In this document: positions 33,201-54,200 of the stretch, in pieces
Layout: each line of letters begins with the position of its first letter
Numbering within the stretch: the first letter of the stretch is position 1
Assembly (NCBI GenBank): GCA_026936335.1
Contig: JAPMXV010000042.1
Location: forward strand, 248,001 to 312,000
Direction of reading: 5' to 3'
Origin: Mantamonas sphyraenae STR306
Taxonomy: Eukaryota > Protista > CRuMs
DNA: 64,000 nt
Made by a program: the position numbers and the translations under genes
Notes under the pieces: model-generated
Databases searched by the model: none
What the model was told of the DNA's origin: nothing
Seen by the model: only the letters and a program-made list of their open reading frames with translations

Positions 33201-36200
33201 CATGCAAACGAGACAAACATTCTCTTCAACGCCAACAGGACTGCGATCAACCGCACCCTGGCCAACGTCACCTTTACCCCGCTCCGCCACTACTATGGCA
33301 ACCTTTCCCTCGTTGTCACTGTCACCGACCTTGGACGCTCCGCCGGCATGTGGCCCACAGCCCTGGGCAACACTCTCGACATGAACATCGAGGTGGTCGC
33401 TGTCAACGACGGGCCCTACTTCCTGGACGCCAGCAAGCCTGTCAACCAGAGCTTCTCTGAGGATGTGTACACACCCATCAGTGTCCTTCAAGTCAGTGAC
33501 GTGGATATTCTCGGCTACGAGATGAAGGTCAACATTTCCGCCAGTCGTGGTGTCATCCAGTACAGCGGCCCCGTGCCAGTCATTGTGTCTGGCAATGCTA
33601 CACGTACTCTGACCCTCCGCGGCACCATCACTCAGATGAACGCCGCCCTTCATTCCATCGGCTATCAGCCCGACCTCAACAATGTCTTTGATGACCAAAT
33701 CTACTTTGTCATCTCAGACCAGGGCTTCTATGGCATTGGTGGCGAACTTGCAGACTCGTATGACTACACCATGTACAGTCAGTCGGTCAATGATGCCCCC
33801 TTTGCAACGTCGGTGCCATCGTACACCGTGTATGAAGACGAGCCCCTGCGTTTCCCGCACACAAATGTCTCCGATGTCGATGTGCTTCACTTCAACATGA
33901 CCTTGCGTCTGTCGGTCCAGCACGGTCTGTTCCTCAACGCATCCACATTGGGTGAGGTCGCCTCCGAGCGTTTCTCGCTCGAGTACAACCCGGCCATTGG
34001 TAATCGCTCCATCGAGCTCAACACCACTCTCACCGGCGCCAACAACATCATCCAGTCGCTGTACTACCTTGGCGATCTGCACTTCCATGGCACCGATGCC
34101 CTTCAGATTGATCTGAACGATCTCGGAAACTTTGGAGCCGGCGTGCCTCTTTCGGGCTCCCTCAACGTGCCTGTGTACGTTGTCAGCGTCAACGACCGTG
34201 CCACTGTCTCTGTAGTGCGCAATCTCACTGTCATCGAGGACACTGTGGCAAACATCACCGGCATCAGCCTTTCTGATGTCGACATTGACAGCGCCATCCT
34301 CGGAGTCAACGTCACAGTGGCCTCGGGTACCCTCAACGTGCTCAACGACGCAGCTCTTCTCTCGCAGACATTGCCCTCGGGGACTCCGCACACCGGTTTC
34401 CACCACACCCTCTTGCTCAAGGGCAACCTGACTCAGGTCAACGATGCTCTCGCCTCCCTGCAGTACATCTCCAACTTGCACTTCTGTGGCAACGACACAG
34501 TGCAGGTATCTGTCACCGACTACGGTGCATTTGGGTTCGGTGGTCCCAAGGTCGGCTACGGCGAGTTGTTCCTGTACGTGCGTTGCATCAACGACGCCCC
34601 GCGCATCTCCGGCCCCGCCAACTTTACCATTGTCGAGGATGTCGACACCAAGCTGCTCGGTTTGCAGATTTCCGATGTCGATGTGCAGGTCTATCCCATG
34701 CGCCTTGACATCCGCACCACTCTTGGGTCCTTCAGGTTCCCGCCATACCAAAACACCTGGACCCAATTTGCTCGCGTGAACGCTTCTCGTAGCGCTCTCA
34801 ACACGGTCCTGACCACTGATTTTTGGTATCGCAACTTCATCAACCGTTTGGACAACGATACCCTGTCCATCACCGTCTCGGATCTTGGAAACACCGGCGA
34901 AGGGATCCGCAACACAAGCTACAAGTGGCCCATCAACATTGTGCCTGTGAACGATCCGGTGGTGTTCAGTAACCCCATTGGCCCGTTTGGAGTCCCCGAA
35001 GACACCGAGCATGTCGTCATCCACGGTGGCAACCCGATTCCAAACCCTTCCAATGTCATCACCGTCTCCGACGTCGATCTCGCCCAAACCGGAGAAATCA
35101 TGTTTGTCAACATCACGTGCGACCACTGTTTCCTGGCTTCCGACACCTTGGCCAACGTCACTCTGTTTGGTGGCCTCGAACCTCAGCAAGGACCGGGTAA
35201 CTGGTTCCGCAACGAGATCTCCTTCAATGCCACCCTTACCGGTGCCAACGAGGCTCTCTCCACACTGAGGTACCGCGGACACCTGCATTTCAACGGCGCC
35301 GACACCTTGCGTGTCTACGCCAATGACTATGGCGTCTTTGGACTCGGTGTTCCCCTCGATGCAGTTACCACGGTGGCCGTCACGGTTTGGGCTGTCAACG
35401 ATGCACCCATTTTCCAGACTGCCTACCCCATCAACGTGACCGAGGACACTGAGACCCTCCTCGTCGGCCTCTCTGTCACCGATGTGGACAACGCAGTCGG
35501 CCTCTGGCTGGACCTCAACGTCACGGGTGGCACTGCACAGATCCCGGCCTCGGGCTCCTTGGTGGCCGACGGCGACATCACCACACCCATGCCTGTCAAC
35601 GCGACTTATCTGACCCAGGTCAGCCTTCTGCCCTGGGCCACAGATTGCCATGCGTACCGTCAGCACGGCTACACGTCCAGCGGCTACTACGTCGTTGATC
35701 CTGATGGAAGCGGTGTCATCGACAAGTTTTTGGTGTATTGCGATATGTCCAACGACGGTGGTGGATGGGCTTCCATCTTCTACTCGTCTGCACCGGCTTT
35801 TGACGCCGCTGGCGCCTCCTCCGCCGTCACATTTGGCAACGACGACCACGACTCCACCCTCATGTGGAAGGACTACACCGGCCAGATTGCCACCACCAAC
35901 ACGAACAACGGCAACTCGGCCGTGTTCCGTACCTATCAGCGTGATGGCACAGTCCCGGCCACAGTTGCCGGTATGCCGGGTGTTCGCCCCTACGGCTTGA
36001 CCGCAACGGCCAAGCCGATCGTTTTCCCGGCTGTAAACAAGGTTGTGTGGATCGACTACGGTGCAGGCAGGATGCGCTGGGAGGAAGGAGCATGCAGGAT
36101 CAACCTTGACGCAGCTGCGTCCGCCTCCAGCCAGGCCTTTTCATCAATGCCGGCCACTCAACTGACAGTGGGCATGCTCACCTTCATTGCTGGTGGCTCC

Positions 36201-39200
36201 CACCTCGACCTCACCTACGGCACCAACCAGCTGCGCCTCACAGGCAACCCGCTCCAGGTCACTGTGGCTGGAAACACCGTCAACACAGGTGTGACCATGT
36301 TCACTGGCCAGCTGATGACGGTCGCCGTCACCTGGCGTGCCTCAGATGGCGCTACCCAAGTTCTTCGCGACGGCACCGCCGTGTGGACTGGAACCCTGAG
36401 TGCAGGCGCTTCCATCCCCAACGGCCTGCCTCTGATCATTGGAGGTTCAGGCTCCAACTCGCAATACGACGAGATTATTCTGTTGGACTACATCGAGTCG
36501 CAGCCCAACATCAACAACTGGCGCTTCTACGGTATCGGTGGTGGTGAACAGGGTGTGCGCGCTTACTACAAGGCCGACGACTGTGCAGGCAACACCATGC
36601 ACGACCTCGGACCGTTCAAGCAGCACCTCTCGGTCGCTGGAGGAACGCACAGCTGGTTGGCCGACAACGGCATCGCCCACACAATCCCGCTCACTGACCT
36701 TGGCATCGTTGCAAGCACCTTTAGCACGCCCGGCAACAACTTTGGCTTCATCAGCGATGGTGTTAACCAGGTGCTCGTGTTCGGCAACGGCATGAACGAC
36801 AAGCTGCTCACGTTCAACTGGGTGCACCGCAATGTGAGCTCGGAAGACACCGGTACGGCCGCGTTCACGCCTGCAGGCGGATACTATGCCACTGAGGAAG
36901 ATGCATTCGGTCACCAGCTGTGGACTGTCAACGGTCGCGCTTTTTACAAGTCGGCTGGATGGGACTTCCGCATGGCGGGTACCATCAAGAACCCGCAGGC
37001 TCTGGGCACCGACTACGCCTTTACAGCTGGCGTACAAAACACACAGTTCGGTCTTGATTTCTTCATTCGAGTCGACAACTCGGGCTACGTCTGGTTGGGT
37101 GACTGGGGCCACGACAACGGTGGCTACTTTGGTTTCGGCAACGATGACAACCTGGGTGTGCGCAAGACCAACATTCAGCTGACCACCGAATTGCCAAATG
37201 CGGGCAACACGAACGCCTATGTTGCACGAGGCATCCCAGCGTCGGATGGCGTCTCCGAGCTTGTGCCTGGCACAGCCCTTCGATTGCAAGGCAGCCTCGA
37301 CCAGCTGAACAGCAAGCTTGCTCAGCTGAGGTACACCCCGTACGCAAACGTGGACACGAACCAGACGATGCGCACTCGCATTACAGATGTCCACGGACAC
37401 TACACGGACAAGATCACCTCGCTGCGATCATCATCGCGGTGAACGACGCCCCTGTGCTGAGTGCTGTGTCGATGAGCTATGCCGGTGTGGAGGACACGGT
37501 GCTGGTGCTGCAGGATCAGCTGCAGCTGAGCGACGTGGACGCGTACGAGCTGCCCATGGAGCTCAACATCTCTGTCAGCCACGGTGGCTTCCAGCTGCCG
37601 GCCATGGCTTCGGTCACGGTGCAGACGCTGGCATCCACCAACGCCTCCATGCCTGCCCACTGGCGCTCCGTGCGTCTGCGGGGCACCCGAGCTGCGCTTA
37701 ACCGCACGCTGTCTCTCGTGAGCTACATGCCCGATCTGCACTTCTACAGCACCGATGCTCTGCAAGTGTCTGTCAACGATCTGGGCAACAGCGGCTGGGG
37801 CGGTGAACTGACCCACGCTCTGAACATCACGTTCAACGTGGCTCCGGTGAACGATGCTCCTATCTTTACGGTGCCCACCAGCTTCTACGCCATCTCGGAG
37901 GACACCCAGGCCACCATCGACGGCATCACGCTCGTGGATGTGGACACTGCGCCCAACGAGCAGCTTGGTTTCCGCTTGGTTGCACCGAACGGCCGTCTGT
38001 TCCTGAACACGAGCCAGGCAGGAGCTGCTGGCGCGTCGTTTGACCCTGTGTACGTCAATGGCGGTGCCGATGTGCGTGTCAACGCCACGCAGATGCAGTT
38101 TGCAGCGTTGATGCATGCCATGGTGTACCTGCCCAACCTGCACTTTGTGGACAACGAGACGGTGGCCATTTCGGCCACGGACTATGGTCGCTACGGAAGC
38201 GGAGGTGTGCAGTACGCCAACGCAGCGGTTGTGGTCAACATGCAGCGGGTCAACGATCTGCCGCGTCTGGACGCACGTCTTACGTACACCATCAAGGAGG
38301 ACGAGGTGTTGACGCTGAGCGCCATCAACGTGACCGACGTCGACGTGTTGCCCACAGACATCATGCGTCTCAACATCACAGTGGAGAAGGGCCGCCTTTC
38401 CATTGCCAACAACACATGGGCTTCCATTTTCGCCGGCCATGTGTCTCCGGGCGCCCCAACCGCTGACATCAACTTGTCGGGCAACATTTCGTCCATCCAG
38501 CGCGTGTTGGACGAGATTACGTACTACCCGTACCCGCACTTCAACGGCTTTGAGAACATCACCATGATCATTGACGATCTTGGCTCCGGTGGTCTCGTCG
38601 TCGTCGGCACACGACACGTGATTCAAATCCAGATTTACCTCATTCCACAGAATGACGCTCCGTTCATCACCACGGTGCACGGTCCGTTCTACGTGTCGGA
38701 GGACACCCAACTGGCAGTGTCCAATCTGGCCACTGTGTCGGATGTCGATGTCGTTGACGGCTTGCTGGAACTCAACCTCACCGTGCAGCACGGTCGCCTG
38801 TCCTTCAACACCACCTCTGGTCTGGTGTTCATGTATGGCACCAACCAGTCGGCACCCCATCTCTCTGTGCGTGGCCAGCTGACCTCGATCAACTCTGCCC
38901 TTGAGTCTGTGTCCTACATGCCGGACTTGCACTACTTTGGCAACGACACAATCGCCATGGACATCAACGATATCGGCAACAAGGGCGCTGGTCCCACAAG
39001 CGGTTTGTCTGACAGTGGCACGTGGCCCTCTTCATTGGATCGGTGAACGACAACCCTGTGTTTGTGAACCTCCCTGCATCGTACGTGGTGACGGAAGACA
39101 CACTGACGGCGCTGCCGGGCATCTCCATCTCGGATGTGGATGACGACACCGCTCGCCTCACCGTCGAGCTCACGGTCACCATGGGCAGCCTGTCGTCCAG

Positions 39201-42200
39201 CAACATGGCCGACGTGCCCGCCAACTTGACCTTTGAACAACGCCGATCCGGGAGCCATTGTGATCAACGGCACCTTTGTTGCGCTGAACCGCTTCCTGTC
39301 GGGTCTGCGATACATGCCCAAGCTTCACATCGACTACAACATGACACTGAGCATGCGTGTGATCGATGACGATGGCAACGCCACAGTGTCGTCGTCTGTG
39401 CTGCAGCTGGTGCCTGTGAACGACGCACCGCAACTGCGTCTCGTGCCCGCCGTCTTCTTGGCGGAAGACACCGTCGCCAACGTGTCTGGCTCGTTCATTG
39501 CCGATGTGGATGGCAAGCCGTGGCACCAAGTGACCATGAACATCTCATCGACCCATGGTCGCTTCCGCTCGTGCGGCCCGCCCTGCGCAGCGCTGACCAA
39601 CAACGCTACACATGACGACCTGCTGCGCACAGTTGTGTACAGTGGCAGCTACTCATGCATCAACAGCACCCTGGCGTGCTTGGTGTACGTGCCCGACATC
39701 CACTTCTTTGGCGCTGCCGAGATTCTGGTGTACGTGGACGACTTGGCCACGGGCGGCGCGCCCGATGTGCAGACCGATGCCGGAGTGATTGCAGTCAATG
39801 TGTCGTCTGTGAACGACAACCCGGTGTTTGTGAACGCCAGTGCATCGTATGCAGTGACGGAGGACACCCTGACGGCGCTGCCGGGCATTTCCATTTCCGA
39901 CGTGGACGACTACAACGTGGTGCCGTTCTTTGTGTCGCTGAACGTGTCGTCGGGTGTGGTGTCGAGTGCGGCCGACCTGACCAAGGGCAGTGGCTTCCTG
40001 ACACAGAGTCTGAACGGGGCTGGCGTGAGCGGTTTGCAGGTTTCCCCGTGGGCCAAGAGCTGCCACGCGTACAAGGCACAGGGTGCCAACACCACTGGTC
40101 TGTACGTGATCGATGTGGACGGCAACGGTCCGCTGGGCAACACTGTTGTGTACTGTGACATGGAAAGCGACGGCGGAGGTTGGGCGTCTGTGTTTTACGC
40201 AGACACGACGCCGGCCTGGGACACGGGCAGCAGCGTAGAGGTGCCGCTTGTGTTTGCCAACGACGACATGGACTCGACCATCCTGTGGGCCGACAACTCG
40301 GGTCAGGTGATGATCGACAACGGTGATGTGACCAGCACCAACGTGTTCCGTAGCGTTCGCCCTGATGGGACTGCGCTGACGACACAGCACGTGTTGCCAG
40401 GCACACGCCCCAGCTACATCGGCAACAACGCACGTCCTGTTGTGCACAACGGTATCAACCGTGTGTCGTGGCTGGACTGGCAGAACTCGCGCTTCGTGGT
40501 TGCACCCAAGGAAGGCTGTGCCTTTTACATGACGGCTGCCACAGCCAACGTGGCCATCCGCAACCCGATGAACACGTTCCCTGGCACTTCGTTGACGCTG
40601 TCGTTCTGGGCCCGTGTGCTGAACCCGAACCAGCTGTGGCTGGGCTACTCTATCCCGGCCACCGACAACGCACTGTACATCCATGCGGCTGCTAGCAACA
40701 CACTGACCGTGTTTGTTGCTGGTAACTCGGTGGCCACGTCCGCGATTCCGTTTGTGGCTGGTCAGTGGATGCACTTTGCACTGACGTGGAACTCTGCGGG
40801 TGGTGCAGTGCAGTTCTTTGCGAACGGTGCGCAGTACCTGAGCACGTCGGTGTCGAACGGTGCGACGATTGCCAACGGCGGTTCGTTTGTGTTGGGCTGT
40901 GACCAGGATGGTGTGGATGTTGTGAACGACAACTCGCAGTGCACAAACGGACAGTTTGACGAAGTGGCGCTGTTTGACCACGTCAAGTCGATTGGCGACA
41001 TCAACGCGTTCCGTTTCAACGGTCTGAAGGGCAACGAAGCGGGTCTGCGAGCGTACTGGAAGAGTGATGTGTGCACGGGTAACGTGCTGAAGGATCAGTC
41101 GGGCAACGCACAGGACATGACTGTGCGTGGCACGCCGACATGGCAGACGCCGGTGGGTGTGTCGGAGATTGTGACGTTTGCGGACCTTGGTCTGACCAGC
41201 GACGCTGGTCTTAGCACGTACGGTCAGAACTTTGTGATTGCCAGCGATGGTGTGAGTGAGTTTATGCTGCGCAGCAACGCGCAAGCCGACAGGCTGATCA
41301 GCATTGACTGGGAACATCGCAACGTGAGTTCGCGCGCCACTGGCACGACTGCGTTTTCGCCTGCTGGAGGGTACTTTGGCACCGAGCAGGATGCGTTTGG
41401 TCACCATCTGTGGACGGTGAACGGCCGTGTGATGTACACGTCATCGTCGTACAACCAGCGCATGGCGGGTACGCTGACCAACATCCAGGGCCAGGCGAAC
41501 GACTACTCGTTCCCCGGTGCAATTGACAACACCCAGTTTGGTTTGGATCTGTTCTTCCGCACCAACGCCCAGGGTTTCCTGTACTTTGGTGATTGGGGCC
41601 ACGACAACGGTGGCTACTTTGGGCAGGGCAACGACGACCGCATGGGCACACGCCGCACCAACATCCGCTTCACGGACTGGCTGACGACAACTGGCAACGT
41701 GAGCGTGACTTTCAGCCCGAAGGAGGGCATTGTGGTGGATCCTCTGGCGGAGATTGTGGTGTCGACTCGTGCGAACGGAGTGGACTTGCAAGGCGGCATG
41801 GTGGGTGTGAACAAGTACCTGTCAGGCCTGCAGTACATGCCTGGACTGCACGTGGACACGAACCAGACGCTGGATGTGCGTGTGATGGACGAAGACGGAC
41901 ACTACACTGAGCGTCGCCTTGTGATGCACATTGGTGCGGTGAACGACGCCCCCGTGCTGAATGCTGTGTCGATGAGCTATGCCGGTGTGGAGGACACGGT
42001 GCTGGTGCTGCAGGATCAGCTGCAGCTGAGCGACGTGGACGCGTACGAGCTGCCCATGGAGCTCAACATCTCTGTCAGCCACGGTGGCTTCCAGCTGCCG
42101 GCCATGGCTTCGGTCACGGTGCAGACGCTGGCATCCACCAACGCCTCCATGCCTGCCCACTGGCGCTCCGTGCGTCTGCGGGGCACCCGAGCTGCGCTTA

Positions 42201-45200
42201 ACCGCACGCTGTCTCTCGTGAGCTACATGCCCGATCTGCACTTCTACAGCACCGATGCTCTGCAAGTGTCTGTCAACGATCTGGGCAACAGCGGCTGGGG
42301 CGGTGAACTGACCCACGCTCTGAACATCACGTTCAACGTGGCTCCGGTGAACGATGCTCCTGTGTTTACGGTGCCCACCAGCTTCTACGCCATCTCTGAG
42401 GACACCCAGGCCACCATCGACGGCATCACGCTCGTGGATGTGGACACTGCGCCCAACGAGCAGCTTGGTTTCCGCTTGGTTGCACCGAACGGCCGTCTGT
42501 TCCTGAACACGAGCCAGGCAGGAGCTGCTGGCGCGTCGTTTGACCCTGTGTACGTCAATGGCGGTGCTGATGTGCGTGTCAACGCCACGCAGATGCAGTT
42601 TGCAGCGTTGATGCATGCCATGGTGTACCTGCCCAACCTGCACTTTGTGGACAACGAGACGGTGGCCATTTCGGCCACGGACTATGGTCGCTACGGAAGC
42701 GGAGGTGTACAGTACGCCAACGCAGCGGTTGTGGTCAACATGCAGCGGGTCAACGATCTGCCGCGTCTGGACGCACGTCTTACGTACACCATCAAGGAGG
42801 ACGAAGTGTTGACGCTGAGCGCCATCAACGTGACCGACGTCGACGTGTTGCCCACAGACATCATGCGTCTCAACATCACAGTTGCGCGTGGTAGTTTGTC
42901 ATTGGACATGTCTGCTGACGTGCAACTGGTTGACTACGTTCAGAGTGGTGACGCACAGACTGTGTCGTTTGCCATGAATCTTACCGCGGTGAACACGCTG
43001 CTGTCGCATGTCGTCTACACGCCTCGTCTGCAGTCGTTTGGATTTGACAACATCACTTTGATTATCGATGATATGGGTGCAGATGGCCTTCAAGTTTTGG
43101 GCACACGACACGTGATTCAAATCCAGATTTACATCATCCCGAAGAACGACGCTCCGTTCATCACCACGGTGCACGGTCCGTTCTACGTGTCGGAGGACAC
43201 CCAACTGGCAGTGTCCAATCTGGCCACTGTGTCGGATGTCGATGTCGTTGACGGCTTGCTGGAACTCAACCTCACCGTGCAGCACGGTCGCCTGTCCTTC
43301 AACACCACCTCTGGTCTGGTGTTCATGTATGGCACCAACCAATCGGCAACCCATCTCTCTGTGCGTGGCCAGCTGACCTCGATCAACTCTGCCCTTGAGT
43401 CTGTGTCCTACATGCCGGACTTGCACTACTTCGGCAACGACACAATCGCCTTGGGCGTTAACGATCTCGGCAACACTGGCTCCGGCAATGATACTGCACT
43501 GTCGACGAGCTATGCATGGACAATCCTGGTTGCTTCCGTGAACGACAACCCTGTGTTTGTGAACCTGCCTGCATCGTACGTGGTGACGGAAGACACAGTG
43601 ACGGCGCTGCCAGGCATCTCCATCTCGGATGTGGATGACGACACCGCTCGCCTCACCGTCGAGCTCACGGTCACCATGGGCAGCCTGTCGTCCAGCAACA
43701 TGGCCGACGTGCCCGCCAACTTGACCTTGAACAACGCCGATCCGGGAGCCATTGTGATCAACGGCACCTTTGTTGCGCTGAACCGCTTCCTGTCGGGTCT
43801 GCGATACATGCCCAAGCTTCACATCGACTACAACATGACACTGAGCATGCGCGTGATCGATGACGATGGCAACGCCACAGTGTCGTCGTCTGTGCTGCAG
43901 CTGGTGCCTGTGAACGACGCACCGCAACTGCGTCTCGTGCCCGCCGTCTTCTTGGCGGAAGACACAGTCGCTAACGTGTCTGGCTCGTTCATTGCCGATG
44001 TGGATGGCAAGCCGTGGCACCAAGTGACCATGAACATCTCATCGACCCATGGTCGCTTCCGCTCGTGCGGCCCGCCCTGCGCAGCGCTGACCAACAACGC
44101 TACACATGACGACCTGCTGCGCACAGTTGTGTACAGCGGCAGCTACTCGTGCATCAACAGCACCCTGGCGTGCTTGGTGTACGTGCCCGACATCCACTTC
44201 TTTGGCGCTGCCGAGATTCTGGTGTACGTGGACGACTTGGCCACGGGCGGCGCGCCCGATGTGCAGACCGATGCCGGAGTGATTGCAGTCAATGTGTCGT
44301 CTGTGAACGACAACCCGGTGTTTGTGAACGCCAGTGCATCGTATGCAGTGACGGAGGACACCCTGACGGCGCTGCCGGGCATTTCCATTTCCGACGTGGA
44401 CGACTACAACGTGGTGCCGTTCTTTGTGTCGCTGAACGTGTCGTCGGGTGTGGTGTCGAGTGCGGCCGACCTGACCAAGGGCAGTGGCTTCCTGACACAG
44501 AGTCTGAACGGGGCTGGCGTGAGCGGTTTGCAGGTTTCCCCGTGGGCCAAGAGCTGCCACGCGTACAAGGCACAGGGTGCCAACACCACTGGTCTTTACG
44601 TGATCGATGTGGACGGCAACGGTCCGCTGGGCAACACTGTTGTGTACTGTGACATGGAAAGCGACGGCGGAGGTTGGGCGTCTGTGTTTTACGCAGACAC
44701 GACGCCGGCCTGGGACACGGGCAGCAGCGTAGAGGTGCCGCTTGTGTTTGCCAACGACGACATGGACTCGACCATCCTGTGGGCCGACAACTCGGGTCAG
44801 GTGATGATCGACAACGGTGATGTGACCAGCACCAACGTGTTCCGTAGCGTTCGCCCTGATGGGACTGCGCTGACGACACAGCACGTGTTGCCAGGCACAC
44901 GCCCCAGCTACATCGGCAACAACGCACGTCCTGTTGTGCACAACGGTATCAACCGTGTGTCGTGGCTGGACTGGCAGAACTCGCGCTTCGTGGTTGCACC
45001 CAAGGAAGGCTGTGCCTTTTACATGACGGCTGCCACAGCCAACGTGGCCATCCGCAACCCGATGAACACGTTCCCTGGCACTTCGTTGACGCTGTCGTTC
45101 TGGGCCCGTGTGCTGAACCCGAACCAGCTGTGGCTGGGCTACTCTATCCCGGCCACCGACAACGCACTGTACATCCATGCGGCTGCTAGCAACACACTGA

Positions 45201-48200
45201 CCATTTTTGTTGCTGGTAACTCGGTGGCCACGTCCGCGATTCCGTTTGTGGCTGGTCAGTGGATGCACTTTGCACTGACGTGGAACTCTGCGGGTGGCGC
45301 AGTGCAGTTCTTTGCGAACGGTGCGCAGTACCTGAGCACGTCGGTGTCGAACGGTGCGACGATTGCCAACGGCGGTTCGTTTGTGTTGGGCTGTGACCAG
45401 GATGGTGTGGATGTTGTGAACGACAACTCGCAGTGCACAAACGGACAGTTTGACGAAGTGGCGCTGTTTGACCACGTCAAGTCGATTGGCGACATCAACG
45501 CGTTCCGTTTCAACGGTCTGAAGGGCAACGAAGCGGGTCTGCGAGCGTACTGGAAGAGTGATGTGTGCACGGGTAACGTGCTGAAGGATCAGTCGGGCAA
45601 CGCACAGGACATGACTGTGCGTGGCACGCCGACATGGCAGACGCCGGTGGGTGTGTCGGAGATTGTGACGTTTGCGGACCTTGGTCTGACCAGCGACGCT
45701 GGTCTTAGCACGTACAGTCAGAACTTTGTGATTGCCAGCGATGGTGTGAGTGAGTTTATGCTGCGCAGCAACGCGCAAGCCGACAGGCTGATCAGCATTG
45801 ACTGGGAACATCGCAACGTGAGTTCGCGCGCCACTGGCACGACTGCGTTTTCGCCTGCTGGAGGGTACTTTAGCACCGAGCAGGATGGGTTTGGTCACCA
45901 TCTGTGGACGGTGAACGGCCGTGTGATGTACACGTCATCGTCGTACAACCAGCGCATGGCGGGTACGCTGACCAACATCCAGGGCCAGGCGAACGACTAC
46001 TCGTTCCCCGGTGCAATTGACAACACCCAGTTTGGTTTGGATCTGTTCTTCCGCACCAACGCCCAGGGTTTCCTGTACTTTGGTGATTGGGGCCACGACA
46101 ACGGTGGCTACTTTGGGCAGGGCAACGACGACCGCATGGGCACACGCCGCACCAACATCCGCTTCACGGACTGGCTGACGACAACTGGCAACGTGAGCGT
46201 GACTTTCAGCCCGAAGGAGGGCATTGTGGTGGATCCTCTGGCGGAGATTGTGGTGTCGACTCGTGCGAACGGAGTGGACTTGCAAGGCGGCATGGTGGGT
46301 GTGAACAAGTACCTGTCAGGCCTGCAGTACATGCCTGGACTGCACGTGGACACGAACCAGACGCTGGATGTGCGTGTGATGGACGAAGACGGACACTACA
46401 CTGAGCGTCGCCTTGTGATGCACATTGGTGCGGTGAACGACGCCCCCGTGCTGAATGCTGTGTCGACGAGCTATGCCGGTGTGGAGGACACGGTGCTGGT
46501 GCTGCAGGATCAGCTGCAGCTGAGCGACGTGGACGCGTACGAGCTGCCCATGGAGCTCAACATCTCTGTCAGCCACGGTCACTTCCAGTTGCCTTTCCTT
46601 ACTGAGCTCGCACAGCAGATCACGATCATCCCGAAGGCACGTACATTCTTGAACTGCACCAACGCAACCTCATGCAGCGATGTTACCACGTGCAACAACG
46701 TCACGACTTGCCAGAACACCTCGGACTGCGCCAATGTGACGACTTGTCAAAACTCGACCTCGTGTCAGAACCTGACAACCTGTGAGAATGTGACTGCTTG
46801 CCAGAACATGACCACATGTCAGAACGTGACCGCGTGCCAGAACCTGACAACGTGCCAGAACGTCTCCACGCCTGTGACGACATGCTCGTCGGGTGCCAAC
46901 TCCACAGAGGGTCTCAACTGCACCATGATGTGGATCAACTGCACCAACGGCGTGTCGATGAACTGCACGGGCATGAACTGCACCAACATGACGATGCCGG
47001 GCGCCAACTGCACGGCTGTGCTTGTGTGCGTGAACGCGACGGCGAGCGCCAGCAATGGCAGCGAACCTGTGGTGAACTGCACGCAGACGTTTGTGGACAG
47101 CAGCAACTGCAGCACGAACCCAAGTTGCACTACTTTCACCAACTGCACAACTGGCCCTGTTTGCAACACGACTGCGAACTGCACGACCACACCCAGTTGC
47201 ACAACGACAACGAACTGCAGTACCGGCGTTGAATGCGTCATGGGTGTCAACTGCACTACCAGCCTGAGCTGCAACACGTCTCCCAATTGCACACACTACC
47301 CTGTGTGTGTGTGGATGCAGAACGGTACCTTGCCTGTGCCGGTGGCGACTCAGCCGGTGAACAGCTCCTTCCTGAACTGTACGCAGAAGGAGGTGTGTGT
47401 AGTGATGAACATTACTGCACCGCCTGCACAGAACACGACGTATCTGAACTGCAGCAATGTGGAGACGTGCCAGCCTGTGATGACATGCCAGAACGTCTCT
47501 ACGCCGGTGACGACCTGCTCGTCGGGTGCCAACTCCACAGAGGGTCTCAACTGCACCATGATGTGGATCAACTGCACCAACGGTGTGTCGATGAACTGCA
47601 CGGGCATGAACTGCACCAACATGACGATGCCGGGCGCCAACTGCACGGCTGTGCTTGTGTGCGTGAACGCGACGGCGAGCGCCAGCAATGGCAGCGAGCC
47701 TGTGGTGAACTGCACGCAGACGTTTGTGGACAGCAGCAACTGCAGCATGAGCAACAACTGCACTCAACAGTCCGTGTGTGTCTGGATGGTCAATGGTACT
47801 GCAACGTCGGCGCCTGTGATTCCTCCGGTGAACACAACGTACTTGAACTGCTCTGGAGTTGCTGAGGCGTGCCAGAACATGACAACGTGCCAGAACGTCT
47901 CTACGCCTGTGACGACTTGCTCGTCGGGTGCCAACTCCACAGAGGGTCTCAACTGCACCATGATGTGGATCAACTGCACCAACGGCGTGTCGATGAACTG
48001 CACGGGCATGAACTGCACCAACATGACGATGCCGGGCGCCAACTGCACGGCTGTGCTTGTGTGTGTGAACGCGACGGCGAGCGCCAGCAATGGCAGCGAA
48101 CCTGTGGTGAACTGCACGCAGACGTTTGTGGACAGCAGCAACTGCAGCAGCGGCACTGTGTGCACCCAGCAACCCGTGTGTGTTTGGATGGTCAACAACA

Positions 48201-51200
48201 CTGCGCAACAGGAGAGTCCTGCAGCGAACACGACCTACGTGAGTTGCAGTATGCAGCCCTCGTGCAAGTTCGTGGTCAACGTGACGGATCCCGTGCACGC
48301 ATGGTACCGCAGCCTGCGTTTGATCGGTACGCAAGCGGATCTGAACCGCACGTTGTCGCAGCTGCGCTATCTCGCTGATGAACACTTCTACACTCACGAC
48401 TCGTTGGAGATTTCTGTGTCTGATTTGGGCAACTCTGGCTTTGGCGTCCCTCTGGGAGATGCGATGAACATCACTCTGGACATTGTGGGTGTCAACGACC
48501 ACGTGGTGATCACCGTGCCGCACGGTGTGGTGACCACCGAAGACGTGCAGATGGACGTTCCTGTGAGCGTTTCGGATGTGGATCTCGTTTTCAACGAGCT
48601 CACAGTTATGGTGAATGTCACGCACGGTTCGCTGGCAATCAACAACACGGCAGGTCTGGTCTTTGTGGCCCCGTACAACACGAGCCAGTGGCAGCGTATG
48701 ATTGCGTTCAACGCCACATTGCAGCAGACCAACGCAGCATTGGCTACCTTGACTTTCCTGCCCGATCTTCATTTTGTGGGTGTCGCTACGGTCACCATTG
48801 TGGTCCGCGACAACACGCACATCTTCAGTACCGGTGAGTCGATCGTCACGCGGAACACCAGTATCCTGGTGACACCTGTGAATGATCGTGTGATTGCAGA
48901 GGTTGTTTCTGCGCTGCAGGTGAGCGAGGACACGTTGCTGCCTCTTCAGCCGCTGCAAATCTCGGACGTGGACGTGCTCCCGGATCTGGATCCGATCTAC
49001 ACGTACGCTCAAGTGCAGCATGGTTACCTGTTCCTGCAGCAACCGTGGGGCAATATGAGTGTGGTGCAACAGGGCGGCAAGGTGCTGCAGTTCACGGCCA
49101 CCTTGAATGAGCTCAACGCGCTGTTCAACCAGTCACGTGTCCAATACCTGGCCGAGAAGGACTATCATGGCGCGGATGTGGTCACTTGGACGTTCAGTGA
49201 CCAGGGGTACAACGGCTATGGTGACATCATCCCCTTCAACGCCACCACTGCACTCAATGTGAGTGCTGTGAATGACCCGCCCACGATTGCTGCCCCAAGC
49301 AACGTGACCTGCAATGAGGACATCGGGTTCAACTTGACCGCGTTTGCTGTGTCTGATATCGACAGTCTGGACACTCCCATCGAGCTGCACATTTCTGTGG
49401 AGCACGGTACTTTGTCTGGCTTCAATGTCAGCCGATACGCCTACCTTGTGAATGGTTCCATGCCTCTTCCGCAGAACACGACGTATCTGAACTGCAGCAA
49501 TGTGGAGACGTGCCAGCCTGTGATGACATGCCAGAACGTCTCTACGCCTGTGACGACTTGCTCGTCGGGTGCCAACTCCACAGAGGGTCTCAACTGCACC
49601 ATGATGTGGATCAACTGCACCAACGGTGTGTCGATGAACTGCACGGGCATGAACTGCACCAACATGACGATGCCGGGCGCCAACTGCACGGCTGTGCTTG
49701 TGTGCGTGAACGCGACGGCGAGCGCCAGCAATGGCAGCGAGCCTGTGGTGAACTGCACGCAGACGTTTGTGGACAGCAGCAACTGCAGCATGAGCAACAA
49801 CTGCACTCAACAGCCCGTGTGCGTCTGGATGGTCAACACGACGACGCCCGAGCCGCAGGGACCAGTTGTGGCTTCGCACTTGTGGGTCCAGACTGGAATG
49901 GTAAGCAACACGACGTGGCAGTTGAGCATGCGTGCTCCGGTGGCAATTCTCAACGAGACGCTGAAGAGCTTGCACTACCAGCCCAACATGCACTTCTATG
50001 GACCAGACCGCATGACGCTCATGATCGACGATCTCAAGAGCCATGGTGAGATCTTGGAGCCGTGGACTGCTACACACTACGTGGACATTGATGTGGTATC
50101 GATCAACGACGCGCCTGTGATCACGGCCCCGGCCGCTCTGAGCATGAACGAAGAGATCCCGGTTGCTTTCAGCATCAGCGTGAGCGATGTCGATTCGTAT
50201 GAATTGCCGATGAACGTGTCGCTGGAGACGAAGCATGGCAACCTCGTTCTGCAGCTGGGCAACCTGACGGCTGCTGAGCTGGGTGTGTCCAATGCAACGA
50301 TGACCATGCTGCGCAGCAAGAACTACCTGAAGCACGCTGTGTTGCCACAGTCCAAGATCAACATGATCCTGGGTGTGGTGACATACCAGCCGGACGTGCA
50401 CTACTTTGGTGCCGACGTGGTGAACATCACGATCGACGACCTTGGTAACTCGGGTCTGGGCCGCCACGTGGTTGAGCACGACGTGCTGCTCTCTGTTTAC
50501 AGCATTAATGATCACCCGATGTTGCGCAACGTGCCCTTGGCCCTTCAGGTGGATGAAGATGTGCCCCTGCACATCGACGGTATCTGGATGACCGATGTGG
50601 ACGTGGAAGACCGCCTCATGACGGTGCGCATGTCGAGCACATTTGGCAACCTGACACTGGACACGACTTTGGGTCTGAACTTCACTGAGGGCACCGTGAA
50701 TGGTCTCACCTCGCTGGTGTTCACTTGTGCGCTGCCCAACTGCTCTCAGGCCATCGGAAACTTCACCTACACGCGCGTGCCGCACTGGTACGGCAAGGAT
50801 CAGATTGTGTTGCAGGTGAACGACAACGACGTGGCTGGCGTCCATTCGCTGGGTGGTGCTCTGGTAGACAACGCGCTCATCAACGTGACCGTGGTGCCGC
50901 AGAATGATGCGCCTCGTATCTGGGTGGCCACGTCGTACATGGCTGTGTCTGAGGACACGGAGTTGACCATTACGGGTGTTCATGTCACAGACATCGACGT
51001 TTACGCCTTGCCTATGGAACTGAACCTGACGGTCTACCATGGTCGCATCTACCTCCCGCTGCCTGTCATCGCACAAGAGGCCAACTCCAACATGACCCAG
51101 GGCATGAACATGACAGAAGGTATGGGCATGATGCAGGGTATGATGAACATGACCCAGACGGTGAACGGCACCATGAATGTCACCGCGAGCGGAAACAACG

Positions 51201-54200
51201 CAACTGCCAGTGCCAACACGACTGTGTGTTCGTGGGTGTCGTCCAACATCACTGTGATGAGCAATGCCACCGCCCAAATGGTATGCAACGAGTCTCAGGT
51301 TTGTATGCCGGCCAACGCCACTATGGTGTGCGCTTGGAACGCTACCCTCAACGCTTCGCAGTGTGCCATGGCGGACAGTTCGCTTGTTTGCAACAACGTG
51401 ACCACTTGCGTGCCTGTGGTTGGACCGATGGTCTCCCACAACATCACGGTGTGGCAGTATGTGTGCTTGCAGAACAACACGAACAACACGGCTCAGGCCG
51501 AGCAGCCAGCTGCGCCTGTCAACCCTCTGTACACGCCTGTGCGTCGCGACTTGACTCTGCGTGGTACGGTGACAGACTTGAACGTGGCCATCTCGCGCAT
51601 CTTGTATGTGCCTGACGCGAACTACTACGGCGTGGACCGTTTGGATGTGTCCGTGTCCGATTTGGGCAACTCGGGCGTCGGTCAGCCGCTGCAGGACGCC
51701 AAGTATGTTGATTTGAACGTGACGTGGGTCAACGACGCTCCTGTGTTGGCCGACACGTCCATGTTCAGTTCGTTGCGCAAGCTCAAGGAGGAGATTCCTT
51801 CGCTCATCGAAGGAATCACTCTGACTGACGTGGACTCGTCGTTCTCCAACATGACGATGAACATCACGGTGGCGCACGGTTACATCTCGTTCAATTTCAC
51901 GGTACTGCTGAACCGCACGCTTGTGTCTGTGGACAACAGCAGTGCTATGGTGTTCAACACCACGGGCAACATTACCGTGGGTGGTTTCGATATGCCCAAG
52001 GCCGATCTGGTACGTGTTGCATCGCAGTACGCCAACTACGGGCGCCCGCGCACGTACGGCCGTGGCTTTTCGCTGCGAGCTCCTCTGTTGGACCTGCAGA
52101 TCATGCTCTCTGTGCTGCAATACCAGCCTTTCTGGCCGTACCACGGCGCCGACAACATGACCATCTTTGTTCATGACGAGGGCTATCGCGGCCATGGTGG
52201 TGTCCTGTCGGACACGCTGCACCTTCCCATGACGGTACTGTGGTGCGACGGCAACATCACGTCGGGTCTTATCAAGGACAGCTGTTTTGTGTGTGGTGGC
52301 CACAACGCCACGTGCATCGGTTGCGACAACGTGCCCTGGAGCGGACTGGTCTACGACGCGTGCGGTGTCTGCAACGGAGACAACAGCACATGCAAGGGTT
52401 GTGATGGTGTCCCCAACTCGGGCAAGGTGTACGACGTGTGCGGTGTTTGCGGTGGCCCCGGTCGCGATCAGTGCAACGTGTGTGGTGGAGATGACAGCAC
52501 GTGCAAGGGTTGCGATGGTATCCCCAACTCGGGTCTCAAGTACGACGTGTGTGGCGCTTGCGGTGGCGACAACTCGACGTGCAGGGGTTGCGATGGTATC
52601 CCCAACTCGGGCAAGACCAACGACGTGTGCGGTATTTGCGGAGGCAACGGCTTCACGTGCATTGGTTGTGATGGTGTGCCAAACTCTGGCAAGATCTACG
52701 ACACGTGCGGTGTTTGCGGTGGCAACACCGACTGCACCGGTTGCGATGGCAAGGGTGGTGCCTACGATGGCTGCGGTGTCTGCAACGGCGACAACAGCAC
52801 TTGTGCCGGTTGTGATGGCCAGCCGTTTTCGGGCAAGAAGTATGATCCGTGTGGTGTGTGTGGAGGCGACGGTACGTCGTGCGCAGGTTGTGACGGCGTG
52901 CCCAACTCTGGCAAGAAGTTTGACCAGTGCTTGGTGTGTGACGGTGACAACAGCACGTGTCCTTTCATCACCTCCATCTATCCGAACAGTGGTCTGGTGG
53001 CCGGTGGCGAGACGGTCACGGTGTACGGCCGCAACTTCCGAAACGATGCCCTGTTGCGCTGCCGCTTTGGTAGCACGCTTGTTGCGGCGCAGTACCGAAT
53101 TTTGCTGCCCAGCAATGTGGGTGTGATTTTGTGTCCGACGCCGCCTTCGCCTGTGAACGCGCCCAACGGTGTGGGCTACGTTTCTTTGGAAATCACTGTG
53201 TTCAAGAGCATCTTTACGCAGAACGGCTACGACTTTGGCTACCACCAGCCCCCTCCTGTGGTGGTGCAGTCGCGCATGCGCAATGATGCTGCGTCGATCA
53301 CGGTCACGTTCGACAAGGACACGAACCGTGCCAACTTTGTTGGTTACAAGTCTTGCGACACTCTGTTCAAGCCTACCACGCTGGCGCTGATGGGAGTCAA
53401 CCCCGTGTGCTACTTTGAGAGTGCAACATCGCTGGTGGCATTGCTGCAGGCGGGTACGGTGTTGGATCCTGGCATGATTGTGGAGGTGCAGAACAACTCG
53501 ATTCGTCGCCTGGATGCCCAGTCCAGCGATTCGCGCCTGTATGCCCCTGCGCGCGGATCCGCTCCGGTGCTGTATCCGCTGAATCCCATCCGGCCGGTAG
53601 CTGTCATCAGTGCGCCGCCTGTCATTGGATACTGTGATGGCGTCACGCTGACCACGGCTGCATCGTACGGATCCGGTGCGCGCAACATGCGCTACACATG
53701 GAACGTGACGGCGGTGGGCAACAGTGCCAATACGGCCTATCTCAACTCGATCACTGCTCTGCGCACAGAGTTGGCATCGCGTGGCAACACGCAGTCGACC
53801 CTGACTGTGGCGTCCAGCTTCATCGTGCCGGGCTTTACGTACGAATTTGCGCTGGTGGTGACAAACTTCCTCAACGTCACGGGAGATGCCACGACCAAGC
53901 AGGTTACCAAGGACGTGCTGCCGCTGCCTTCGGTGTCCATCCAGGGTAGCACGCAAATTGACTTTTTGCGTCCGCAGTGGAATGTCATCGAGGCCACGGG
54001 CTCGTTGTCTGTCTGTTCGGTGGAGCGCACACTGGCCTTCCAGTGGGTGCAGCTGTCCGGTCCTACGATTCTGGACAAGGCCGCTACGACCACAGAGCGT
54101 CGTTTGTACTTCCCTCCAGATGTTCTCGCGGTTGGCGAGAAGTACTCGTTCCGCGTGACCGGTACGGTGACAGAAAACCCAACCCTGTTTGCCGCGGCCA

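What the first reader, a model, noticed from the sequence alone, without database searches (positions are those of the whole stretch)
35394..52070. One loop of the cadherin-like repeat acts as a cargo docking site for all large inserts
Seen: every large insert falls between the L.V..G.L strand and the L.G.....N..L..L.Y.P element of a cadherin-like repeat. Fibrinogen/LamG cargo lies at about 35545-37270, 39965-41775 and 44460-46270, Cys-ladder cargo at about 46590-48300, 49420-49915 and 51055-51545, and a small insert at about 51895-52060. Inference: the repeats form a backbone rod with side branches displayed from one permissive loop (a bottle-brush), not beads on a string.
Basis: partly seen in the sequence, partly recalled or inferred. 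Interest (0 to 1): 0.8.

Follow-up and report, generated by a model that had tools for sequence, protein, structure and literature searches.

The report
Split cadherin-like repeats carrying nested domains
In a giant surface protein of a small-genome eukaryote, seven of about 29 cadherin-like rod repeats are interrupted at the same loop by other domains. This is the "split domain" design known from bacterial RTX adhesins, and it appears to be new in a eukaryotic REJ/GPS receptor.

Summary
A 128-column HMM of the ~130-aa VND.P repeat places all six large inserts and the small one between columns 51-65 and 57-67.

This loop is the only place where 105 uninterrupted repeats tolerate insertions over 10 aa.

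AlphaFold2 models give the two host halves pLDDT 85-98. With the cargo trimmed, both halves superpose as one Ig-like, bacterial-cadherin-like domain. As separate chains the halves score ipSAE 0.55 against a best control of 0.01, which the tool rates as weak support.

The events are not all independent:
- FBG/LamG inserts 2 and 3 belong to a 4.5-kb tandem duplication.
- Cys modules are shared at 98.9% nt identity between two hosts.
- Two "before/after" paralog pairs show at least two independent insertions, in two host subtypes.

The FBG/LamG cargo is itself nested: a pentraxin/LamG domain sits inside a FReD-like domain that is contiguous in database relatives.

A ~3,500-aa module (22.6-33.0 kb) sits in line between complete repeats, so the loop does not take every non-repeat module. 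Branch geometry was not measured.

Closest precedent: split Ig-like domains of RTX adhesins. Verdict: real, and a new variant of a known kind. An earlier scan note (s1-596682) had already reported the same nesting on another contig of this genome.

The parts
21271..61671 (+). One giant gene, about 13,400 codons as read across the frame breaks. Order: signal-peptide-like start, 3 repeats, long beta-rich module, 29 repeats, Cys-rich ADAMTS_CR-like modules, TIG, REJ-GPS, EGF, REJ-GPS, membrane region.
   Evidence: ORFs. Pfam. Three of the five frame breaks are absent from independent contigs.
33054..52240 (+). Main array of 29 cadherin-like (Big_9/Cadherin_4-like) repeats of about 130 aa, each starting with a VND.P motif.
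   Evidence: HMM hits. Pfam Big_9 up to 32.6 bits and Cadherin_4 29.3 bits, both above their cut-offs.
35394..37438 (+). Split repeat r35394. N-half 35394-35570; FReD-like + pentraxin/LamG cargo 35571-37262; C-half 37263-37438.
   Evidence: Single independent contigs span 35300-37465, covering both junctions.
39809..41938 (+). Split repeat r39809. N-half 39809-39976; cargo 39977-41761; C-half 41762-41938.
   Evidence: AF2 model with halves at pLDDT 85-90 and 78-89. Foldseek matches pentraxins. ipSAE 0.55 against 0.01.
44303..46432 (+). Split repeat r44303, a 99% identical copy of r39809. Cargo 44471-46255.
46433..48490 (+). Split repeat r46433. N-half 46433-46609. Cargo 46610-48274 is a 555-aa ladder rich in Cys and N-glycosylation sequons: 64 Cys, 67 NxS/T, hexapeptide repeats plus three ~125-aa modules. 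C-half 48275-48490.
49268..50101 (+). Split repeat r49268. N-half 49268-49420; one 14-Cys module 49421-49891; C-half 49892-50101.
   Evidence: AF2 halves at pLDDT 91-98, cargo below 50. Single-domain superposition.
50900..51727 (+). Split repeat r50900. N-half to 51097; cargo 51098-51511 (Met/Asn-rich, then 8 Cys with palindromic spacing 19-6-9-11-9-6-19); C-half 51512-51727.
51728..52240 (+). Repeat r51728 with the same loop expanded by about 50 aa (roughly 51878-52063).
41939..42346 (+). Intact paralog (r41939; its copy is r37439 at 37439-37846) of the Cys-ladder host r46433. This is the 'before' state, with a 16-aa loop.
   Evidence: N-half 52/56 identical and C-half 35/64 identical. Both halves of r46433 match this repeat best.
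43538..43909 (+). Intact paralog (r43538) of the FBG/LamG host r39809. This is the 'before' state, with a ~25-aa loop.
   Evidence: First 34 N-half residues 30/34 identical; C-half 22/46 identical. Both halves of r39809 match it best.
37436..46429 (+). Two copies of a tandem segmental duplication (first copy ~4500 nt, second ~4494 nt; 95.5% identical overall, with long stretches at 98-100%). A partial third copy forms the N-half of r46433.
37428..39232 (+). Three assembly indel sites that cause the frame breaks: 37428 (2 extra letters), 39028 (1 missing), 39232 (1 extra).
   Evidence: Contigs of runs X1-X3 differ from the window at exactly these places. The indels were located against copy 2.
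22600..33050 (+). A ~3,500-aa beta-rich module with no Pfam match. It lies in line between complete repeats, not in a loop.
   Evidence: Flanking repeats are complete. No significant Pfam match; only one hit, well below its cut-off.
52205..59374 (+). Membrane-proximal part: ADAMTS_CR_3-like Cys modules (from 52205), TIG 52961-53200, REJ 54011-55240, GPS 56084-56203, REJ 57020-58351, GPS 59255-59374.

Best explanation
The region encodes the middle of one giant membrane glycoprotein of a eukaryote, polycystin-1/REJ-like. Its extracellular rod is built from about 29 bacterial-type cadherin-like (Big_9/Cadherin_4-like) beta-sandwich repeats.

Shown:
- In seven repeats the variable hairpin between the '..G.L' strand and the 'L.G....LN..L..L.Y.P' strand-helix element (HMM columns ~52-67) is replaced by foreign sequence.
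- The flanking halves together still make one complete domain, so these are split domains with nested cargo.
- The loop is the only insertion-tolerant place in the repeat family.
- At least two insertions happened independently: the FReD-like/pentraxin cargo into an r43538-type repeat, and the Cys/N-glycan ladder into an r41939-type repeat.
- The host-plus-cargo units were then multiplied by a 4.5-kb tandem duplication, by paralogy (contig C4) and by module duplication or gene conversion.
- The FBG/LamG cargo is itself nested, with a pentraxin/LamG domain inside a FReD-like domain. That makes three levels of nesting.

Inferred:
- Because a loop-inserted domain enters and leaves at one point, the cargo hangs off the rod without interrupting it.
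- The invariant N/D/E positions at the repeat boundaries resemble cadherin Ca2+ sites and would stiffen the rod.
- The lectin-like cargo (FReD-like + pentraxin/LamG) probably binds carbohydrate or matrix ligands.
- The Cys ladders probably form heavily N-glycosylated, disulfide-laddered hairpins.
For: - Insert positions in HMM columns.
- The same loop is used by four more cargo copies in the C4 paralog, with N-half ending at col 54-56 and C-half starting at 67-70.
- Indel profile of 105 intact repeats.
- Before/after pairs, with both halves of each host best matching the same intact paralog.
- AF2 models: r39809 halves at pLDDT 85-90 and 78-89; r49268 halves at 91-98.
- Trimmed r49268 model, both halves together. 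It aligns to 9h6j_A residues 141-255 with 108 residues, Z 12.9, rmsd 2.5 A. It aligns to PKD domain 4xed with 93 of 97 residues. It aligns to the SraP cadherin-like modules at Z ~8.
- 125-129 residues align at 1.9-2.2 A to Atlas clusters of Cadherin_4/Big_9 proteins.
- The halves as two chains score ipSAE 0.55 against a best control of 0.01. The tool rates this 'weak support'. That mark was reached by 51 of 78 solved complexes and 2 of 108 mismatched pairs. The runs agree in at least 91% of contacts, and partner pLDDT is at least 72.
- Cargo identity.
- LamG nested in a FReD-like domain. Seven database proteins align to query residues ~82-230 and ~452-623 on adjacent stretches of their own sequence, with no LamG between.
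- Palindromic or even-numbered Cys in the ladder cargo, which fits hairpins with adjacent ends.
- Independent contigs span both junctions of r35394 and remove the frame breaks.
- Most conserved columns are N2, D3, E18, D19, D32, D34, D114.
Against:
- The AF2 alignments consisted largely of intact repeats. High confidence for the reunited halves is therefore partly homology modelling.
- The complex test gave only 'weak support'.
- Much of the cargo is poorly modelled: Cys ladder below 50, FReD-like part C below 50.
- Only two insertions are firmly independent.
- No RNA or protein evidence; no RNA run holds the stretch.
- Two further frame breaks (around 25.7-26.0 kb and 59.3-59.8 kb) were not checked against reads.
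- Ca2+ binding and ligand binding are inferences from motifs and family names.
Confidence: 0.78

Rival explanations
1. The loop is an actively used cassette site. A recombination process repeatedly moves or swaps cargo modules between the homologous loops of different repeats, so the shared position reflects an ongoing mechanism and not just tolerance plus descent.
For: The 365-nt Cys module in r49268 (49472-49836) is 98.9% identical to module 2 inside r46433 (47429-47793). The two host repeats show no detectable nucleotide similarity. The identity between the 4.5-kb units is patchy. The r46433 N-half is 93% identical (aa) to r41939 while its C-half is 55% identical.
Against: Gene conversion between pre-existing homologous inserts explains the same data without any targeting. 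The Cys module occurs only in this gene. No repeats or motifs marking the insertion boundaries were looked for or seen. Only two cargo classes are involved.
Confidence: 0.15
2. Beads on a string. The half-repeats are decayed remnants that do not fold together, and the cargo domains lie in series along the chain.
For: The C-halves of the FBG hosts are weak HMM matches (E about 1e-7) and lack the G.sG.G segment. The complex test was only 'weak support'.
Against: N- and C-halves always cover complementary, non-overlapping parts of the model. For two hosts, both halves best match the same intact paralog. pLDDT for the halves is 85-98. With cargo trimmed, the model superposes as a single domain. 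Controls in the complex test scored 0.00-0.01.
Confidence: 0.05
3. Assembly artefact or dead gene. The interruptions come from mis-joined repeats, or the locus is a pseudogene, as the frame breaks might suggest.
For: The window has frame breaks at 25.96, 37.44, 39.03-39.23 and about 59.6 kb. The region contains near-identical repeats that are hard to assemble.
Against: Contigs from three other runs lack the three breaks that were tested. Single contigs from those runs also span both host-cargo junctions of r35394. An open frame of 6,848 codons runs through five split repeats. A diverged paralog on C4 has the same architecture four times.
Confidence: 0.03

Closest known systems
Split Ig-like (BIg) extender domains of bacterial RTX adhesins (MpIBP, V. 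cholerae FrhA, A. hydrophila AhLap)
   Same: A rod of tandem Ig-like, Ca2+-dependent repeats in which some repeats are discontinuous in sequence. A ligand-binding domain buds out of them and is projected away from the axis. Nested splits also occur (PMC12077191, PMC10865825, bioRxiv 10.1101/2025.09.30.679566). The host fold here matches bacterial Cadherin_4/Big_9 domains.
   Different: - Those are Gram-negative type I secreted proteins with a retention module and an RTX beta-roll. This is a eukaryotic signal-peptide/REJ/GPS/transmembrane protein among eukaryotic housekeeping genes.
- In RTX adhesins the cargo leaves after the first strand or before the last two strands (bioRxiv 10.1101/2025.09.30.679566). 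Here it leaves mid-domain, always at the same homologous loop.
- The cargo types differ: FReD-like + pentraxin/LamG, and Cys/N-glycan ladders.
- Splits are spread along the rod here, not gathered in a distal ligand-binding region.
Bacterial cadherin-like repeats (Pfam Big_9 PF17963, Cadherin_4 PF17803, Cadherin_5 PF17892)
   Same: Sequence matches above the cut-off for some repeats. There is a structural match of 125-129 residues at about 2 A. Boundary motifs (VND.P, ED, D.D) resemble cadherin Ca2+ sites (the resemblance is from my own knowledge).
   Different: Found in a eukaryote. Many repeats score below the Pfam cut-offs. Seven repeats carry nested domains. In the two database proteins with the same repeat plus LamG (P0127, P0140), the LamG lies in line.
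Nested domains in animal matrix and adhesion receptors: integrin beta I domain in the hybrid domain, integrin alpha I domain in the propeller, laminin L4 domain inside an LE module (my own knowledge, not tested here)
   Same: A eukaryotic extracellular rod or stalk domain is split by a ligand-binding domain inserted in a loop.
   Different: Those are single, ancient, fixed insertions in different folds. Here one loop of one repeat family is used several times in one protein, and uninterrupted paralogs lie next to the split ones.
Polycystin-1 / sea-urchin REJ family
   Same: REJ domains (E 6e-71 and 6e-72) and GPS motifs, followed by a membrane region.
   Different: Two REJ-GPS units. No PLAT or channel domain was detected. 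The N-terminal ectodomain is made of bacterial-type repeats in place of PKD/LRR/C-lectin modules.

Membership tests
Bacterial cadherin-like / Big_9 repeat (Pfam PF17963, PF17803, PF17892) | Match to the family HMM at or above the curated cut-off | tested here: met
   Big_9 scores 32.6, 29.5 and 24.6 bits against a cut-off of 23.6, and Cadherin_4 scores 29.3 against 25.1, for segments 50504-51727, 48491-49267 and 49268-50101. Other repeats fall below the cut-off, e.g. 37439-37846 at 19.9.
Bacterial cadherin-like / Big_9 repeat (Pfam PF17963, PF17803, PF17892) | Ig-like beta-sandwich fold of about 100-130 residues | tested here: met
   AF2 pLDDT of 91-98 for the host. 125-129 residues superpose at 1.9-2.2 A on Atlas Cadherin_4/Big_9 clusters. 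Z is 8-12.9 to PDB Ig-like, PKD and SraP cadherin-like domains.
Bacterial cadherin-like / Big_9 repeat (Pfam PF17963, PF17803, PF17892) | Ca2+ binding at inter-repeat junctions | not testable with these tools
   Only motif conservation is available: N2, D3, E18, D19, D32, D34, D114 are invariant or nearly so.
RTX adhesin with split domain plus ligand-binding domain | An Ig-like domain discontinuous in sequence, with another domain emerging from it | tested here: met
   weak support.
RTX adhesin with split domain plus ligand-binding domain | [quoted passage not shown] | tested here: not met
   Pfam scans of all parts of the gene show no RTX or beta-roll families. They show TIG, REJ, GPS and EGF, followed by a membrane region. 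Neighbouring genes are eukaryotic: Npa1/NopRA1, the Methyltransf_8 family, emp24/GOLD. The genome is 25 Mb.
RTX adhesin with split domain plus ligand-binding domain | Cargo projected away from the rod axis | not testable with these tools
Classical cadherin (Pfam PF00028) | Match to the Cadherin HMM | tested here: not met
   PF00028 does not appear among matches up to E = 1.
Polycystin-1 / REJ family | REJ domain followed by a GPS motif and transmembrane segments | tested here: met
   REJ at 6e-71 and 6.1e-72. The second GPS motif scores 1e-8, above its cut-off. The first GPS motif scores 17.3 bits, below the 22.5 cut-off. A hydrophobic segment follows the second GPS.
Polycystin-1 / REJ family | PLAT domain and an 11-TM region with a channel-like end | tested here: not met
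   No Pfam family was found in 59587-61668.
Fibrinogen-related domain (FReD) | Full-length match to Fibrinogen_C | tested here: not met
   Only profile positions 3-45 of 221 match. PDB profile hits cover only the first ~50 residues of FReDs. The whole domain does match a family of contiguous ~315-aa FReD/COLFI-like domains at 32-45% identity.
Pentraxin / LamG (concanavalin-like) | HMM match and jelly-roll fold | tested here: met
   Laminin_G_3 at 6.6e-17 and Pentaxin at 1e-16. Foldseek matches SAP, CRP and PTX3 with target-normalised TM of 0.6-0.7.

The most novel reading that the evidence does not exclude
A eukaryote has built, or acquired and rebuilt, the bacterial 'split extender' adhesin design in a REJ/GPS receptor. 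One loop of a VND.P cadherin-like repeat serves as a recurrent cassette site where cargo modules are still being exchanged between repeats, and it allows three-deep nesting (LamG in a FReD-like domain in the repeat). If so, the repeat family, with at least 656 candidate copies in a 25-Mb genome, would be a natural modular display scaffold with a defined permissive site.
Probability: 0.2. Interest if true: 0.7.

Novelty: new variant of a known kind. Interest (0 to 1): 0.5.

Why it matters
- It gives a clear eukaryotic example of the split-domain principle, which so far is used to find ligand-binding domains in bacterial RTX adhesins. Intact and interrupted paralogs of the same repeat lie side by side in one gene, so the insertion can be read directly.
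- It marks one loop of a widespread repeat fold as tolerant to inserts of 50 to over 600 residues. That is useful for annotating giant repeat proteins, because sequence tools miss split domains. It could also serve as a candidate site for engineered display.
- It identifies the lectin-like FReD-like/pentraxin units as the likely ligand-binding parts of an otherwise uncharacterised family of giant protist surface receptors.

Tried and rejected
- hmmalign on whole split repeats failed to bridge the long inserts. I replaced it with separate half-matches.
- A word search for giant relatives carrying the FBG host (3,766-11,984 aa) found nothing. The profile word search found only FReD/COLFI or LamG pieces.
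- The full HMMER search with the A2 profile gave 7,726 hits. None of the best 150 has an N-half, cargo, C-half arrangement. This does not exclude such proteins lower in the list.
- The Atlas feature search on the cargo only returned LamG clusters.
- Foldseek on the r49268 model gave no significant match. The non-sequential aligner was needed.
- The tree of masked host repeats is too weakly resolved to count insertion events, so I relied on best-match pairs instead.
- LamG hits on C43, C5, C59, C2 and C70 have no repeat around them.
- An intron explanation for the frame breaks was rejected. The breaks are 1-2 nt indels relative to the sister copy and to independent contigs.
- Complex prediction on the two halves gave 'weak support' only. 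I cite it with its control and do not treat it as proof.

Full report
**Setting**

The window is G000:C42:248001-312000 of a 25-Mb, 78-contig genome. Its neighbours are eukaryotic housekeeping genes read as single open frames: Npa1/NopRA1, a Methyltransf_8-family methyltransferase and emp24/GOLD.

On the + strand, five long ORFs (21271-25962, 25959-37442, 37439-39046, 39233-59779 and 59287-61671) follow one another with frame changes. Read together they give this order:
- a signal-peptide-like start;
- three repeats (21406-22593);
- a ~3,500-aa beta-rich module without a Pfam match (22600-33050);
- 29 repeats (33054-52240);
- ADAMTS_CR_3-like Cys modules and a TIG domain;
- REJ-GPS, EGF, and REJ-GPS;
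- a membrane region.

**Frame breaks**

Copy 1 of a 4.5-kb duplication differs from copy 2 by a 1-nt loss at 39026 and a 1-nt gain at 39232. A 2-nt excess lies near 37420-37430.

Contigs from three other public runs of the same organism label differ from the window at exactly these places. Two letters are left out at 37428, an A is put in behind 39028, and one letter is left out at 39232. Each change is carried at full depth. These breaks are therefore assembly indels or strain differences, and the gene is continuous from 25959 to 59779 in those data.

Single contigs in those runs also span 35300-37465, which covers both junctions of the first FBG/LamG insert. The breaks near 25.7-26.0 kb and 59.3-59.8 kb were not tested.

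**The observation**

The repeat is about 130 aa and starts with VND.P. Pfam places it with bacterial Big_9/Cadherin_4/Cadherin_5 domains, above the cut-off for some repeats and below it for others.

I built a 128-column HMM from 24 uninterrupted repeats and searched all repeats with it. In each interrupted repeat the N-terminal piece covers columns 1 to 51-65. The C-terminal piece starts at columns 57-67 and runs to the end. The last repeat (51728-52240) carries 12 + 38 extra residues after columns 54 and 67.

**Is the loop special?**

I aligned 105 uninterrupted repeats from this gene, a paralog on contig C4 and a 9,721-codon paralog on C44. Columns 54-71 are deleted in 10-29% of them, and they hold the only insertions above 10 residues. 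Other indel sites (columns 11, 23, 25, 37, 85, 112) take at most 2-10 residues. The inserts therefore sit in the one hairpin that the family can lose or lengthen.

The C44 gene has 55 repeats and no split. The C4 gene has four further FBG/LamG cargos, 42-49% identical to those here. They lie between columns 54-56 and 67-70.

**How many independent events?**

Fewer than seven.
- Inserts 2 and 3 are 99% identical copies inside the tandem duplication 37436-41935 / 41936-46429.
- All seven FBG hosts share a shortened C-half, which suggests a single ancestral host-plus-cargo unit.
- The ~125-aa, 14-Cys module occurs three times in the 46433 insert and once in the 49268 insert. The copy at 49472-49836 is 98.9% identical to 47429-47793, although the two hosts have no detectable nucleotide similarity. 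The module is unique to this gene.
- The 50900 insert has no nucleotide similarity to the other two Cys-ladder inserts.

Two pairs give a direct before/after reading:
- Intact r41939 (16-aa loop) against split r46433 (566 aa in its place). The N-half is 52/56 identical and the C-half 35/64.
- Intact r43538 (~25-aa loop) against split r39809 (~610 aa). The first 34 N-half residues are 30/34 identical and the C-half 22/46.

In both cases each half of the split repeat has the same intact repeat as its best match. That is what insertion into one domain predicts. Fusion of two unrelated half-domains predicts something different.

The two hosts belong to different repeat subtypes and carry unrelated cargo. 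At least two insertions were therefore independent, and the 50900 and 51728 cases may add two more. With about ten possible sites, coincidence by chance is 0.1 to 0.001. The tolerance profile is the stronger argument.

**Do the halves make one domain?**

- AlphaFold2 on r39809 (710 aa; alignment of 5 split paralogs plus 49 intact repeats) gave pLDDT 85-90 for residues 1-55 and 78-89 for 650-710. The LamG part scored moderately and the rest was low.
- AlphaFold2 on r49268 (278 aa) gave 91-98 for residues 1-55 and 213-278. The cargo (65-212) was below 50.
- With the low-confidence cargo trimmed, the r49268 model aligns as a single unit to contiguous domains of solved structures. It aligns 108 residues to 9h6j_A 141-255 (Z 12.9, rmsd 2.5 A). 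It aligns 93 of 97 residues of PKD domain 4xed, and 89 residues of the SraP cadherin-like modules (Z ~8).
- It also aligns 125-129 residues at 1.9-2.2 A to Atlas clusters of bacterial Cadherin_4/Big_9 proteins. That number of residues requires both halves.
- Folded as two separate chains without any alignment, residues 1-58 and 645-710 of r39809 scored ipSAE 0.55-0.56 in three runs, against 0.00-0.01 for three controls. The tool rates this 'weak support'. The mark was reached by 51 of 78 solved complexes and 2 of 108 mismatched pairs. The runs agree in at least 91% of contacts, and partner pLDDT is at least 72.

The AF2 alignments lean on intact repeats, so the monomer models are partly homology models. 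The chain-pair test does not have that dependence.

**What I could not do.** From the order of predicted strands, the cargo leaves after the fifth or sixth of ten secondary-structure elements, just before the strand-helix element. That is mid-domain.

**The cargo**

The ~595-aa unit has three parts:
- a start resembling the first ~45 residues of fibrinogen-related domains (PDB profile hits to tachylectin (deposited as 'techylectin-5A'), tenascin and fibrinogen cover only that part);
- a pentraxin/LamG jelly-roll (Laminin_G_3 at 6.6e-17, Pentaxin at 1e-16; Foldseek matches SAP, CRP and PTX3);
- a conserved C-terminal part.

The full HMMER search found proteins of 386-1,432 aa in which query residues ~82-230 and ~452-623 align to directly adjacent stretches at 32-45% identity. 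Examples are P0026 (181-324 and 327-495) and P0053 (7-176 and 183-367).

So the first and third parts are one FReD/COLFI-like domain, and the LamG is inserted into it. The nesting is three levels deep. In those relatives the domain lies in line, often at the C-terminus.

None of the best 150 hits shows a repeat half, then cargo, then repeat half. Two hits with the same repeat and LamG (P0127, P0140) carry the LamG in line.

The Cys cargo is dense in NxS/T sequons: 67 in 555 aa. It has even Cys counts, and the 50900 insert has a perfectly palindromic spacing of 19-6-9-11-9-6-19. This fits disulfide-laddered hairpins whose two ends lie together, as a loop insert requires.

**Interpretation**

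The nested, split-domain architecture is well supported. The 'one loop takes all inserts' reading needs three limits:
- Few of the events are independent.
- The largest non-repeat module of the protein (22600-33050) is in line between complete repeats.
- Only 7 of 29 repeats carry a branch.

The most conserved columns (N2, D3, E18, D19, D32, D34, D114) lie in motifs that resemble cadherin Ca2+ sites. The resemblance is from my own knowledge, and binding was not tested.

**Comparison with what is known**

RTX adhesins of Gram-negative bacteria have Ig-like 'split domains' from which ligand-binding domains project away from the axis. Nested cases exist, and sequence tools usually miss these domains (PMC12077191, PMC10865825). 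In those proteins the cargo leaves after the first strand or before the last two strands (bioRxiv 10.1101/2025.09.30.679566).

The present case works the same way, and its host fold is the bacterial cadherin-like one. It is not a member of that family, for these reasons:
- there is no RTX beta-roll or type I secretion signal;
- the genomic context is eukaryotic;
- the membrane end is REJ/GPS;
- the split position is different and constant;
- the cargo is different.

Nested domains in integrins and laminins are a further eukaryotic analogy (my own knowledge). I confirmed its four copies and their loop position.

**Verdict**

It is a new variant of a known kind, of moderate interest.

Noticed in passing
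window 37428, 39028, 39232: The window assembly carries 1-2 nt indels that break the giant gene into separate ORFs. Contigs of three other runs lack them. Many repeat ORFs elsewhere in the genome are also short, which may have the same cause.
   Followed up: yes
window 25731-25962 and 59287-59779: Two more frame changes inside what looks like the same gene. On each side the protein continues sensibly in the other frame. Not checked against reads.
   Followed up: no
window 39977-41761 (also 35571-37262 and 44471-46255): The cargo is itself nested. A pentraxin/LamG domain (about residues 231-451 of r39809) interrupts a FReD/COLFI-like domain that is contiguous in database relatives (P0020, P0023, P0026, P0053 and others).
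   Followed up: yes
L001, L002, L021 (G000:C4:352341-365788, minus strand): A paralogous giant gene has four FReD-like/LamG cargos in the same loop of the same repeat subtype. A frame change follows directly after the first host, as at 37.4 kb in the window.
   Followed up: partly
L006-L008 (G000:C44:~526800-547000): A 9,721-codon open frame holds 55 consecutive uninterrupted repeats and no split repeat.
   Followed up: partly
window 46610-48274, 49421-49891, 51098-51511: Cys-ladder cargo: about 11 tandem hexapeptides with Cys every 6 residues, then 14-Cys modules. The third insert has 8 Cys with palindromic spacing 19-6-9-11-9-6-19. NxS/T sequons are very dense throughout.
   Followed up: partly
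window 49472-49836 and 47429-47793: The Cys modules in two different host repeats are 98.9% identical, while the hosts share no nucleotide similarity. This points to recent duplication or gene conversion of the cargo alone.
   Followed up: partly
window 29529-29828 and 30294-30593: A 765-nt internal duplication (92% identity) lies in the unassigned beta-rich module upstream of the repeat array.
   Followed up: no
window 35366-37055: Runs X1, X2 and X3 differ from each other and from the window at about a dozen single bases inside the first FBG/LamG insert. This suggests strain or allele variation in the cargo.
   Followed up: no
whole genome G000: The VND.P repeat family is very large for a 25-Mb genome: 656 candidates in the first look. 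Arrays with a ~2.7-kb period lie on C27, C28, C29 and C32.
   Followed up: no
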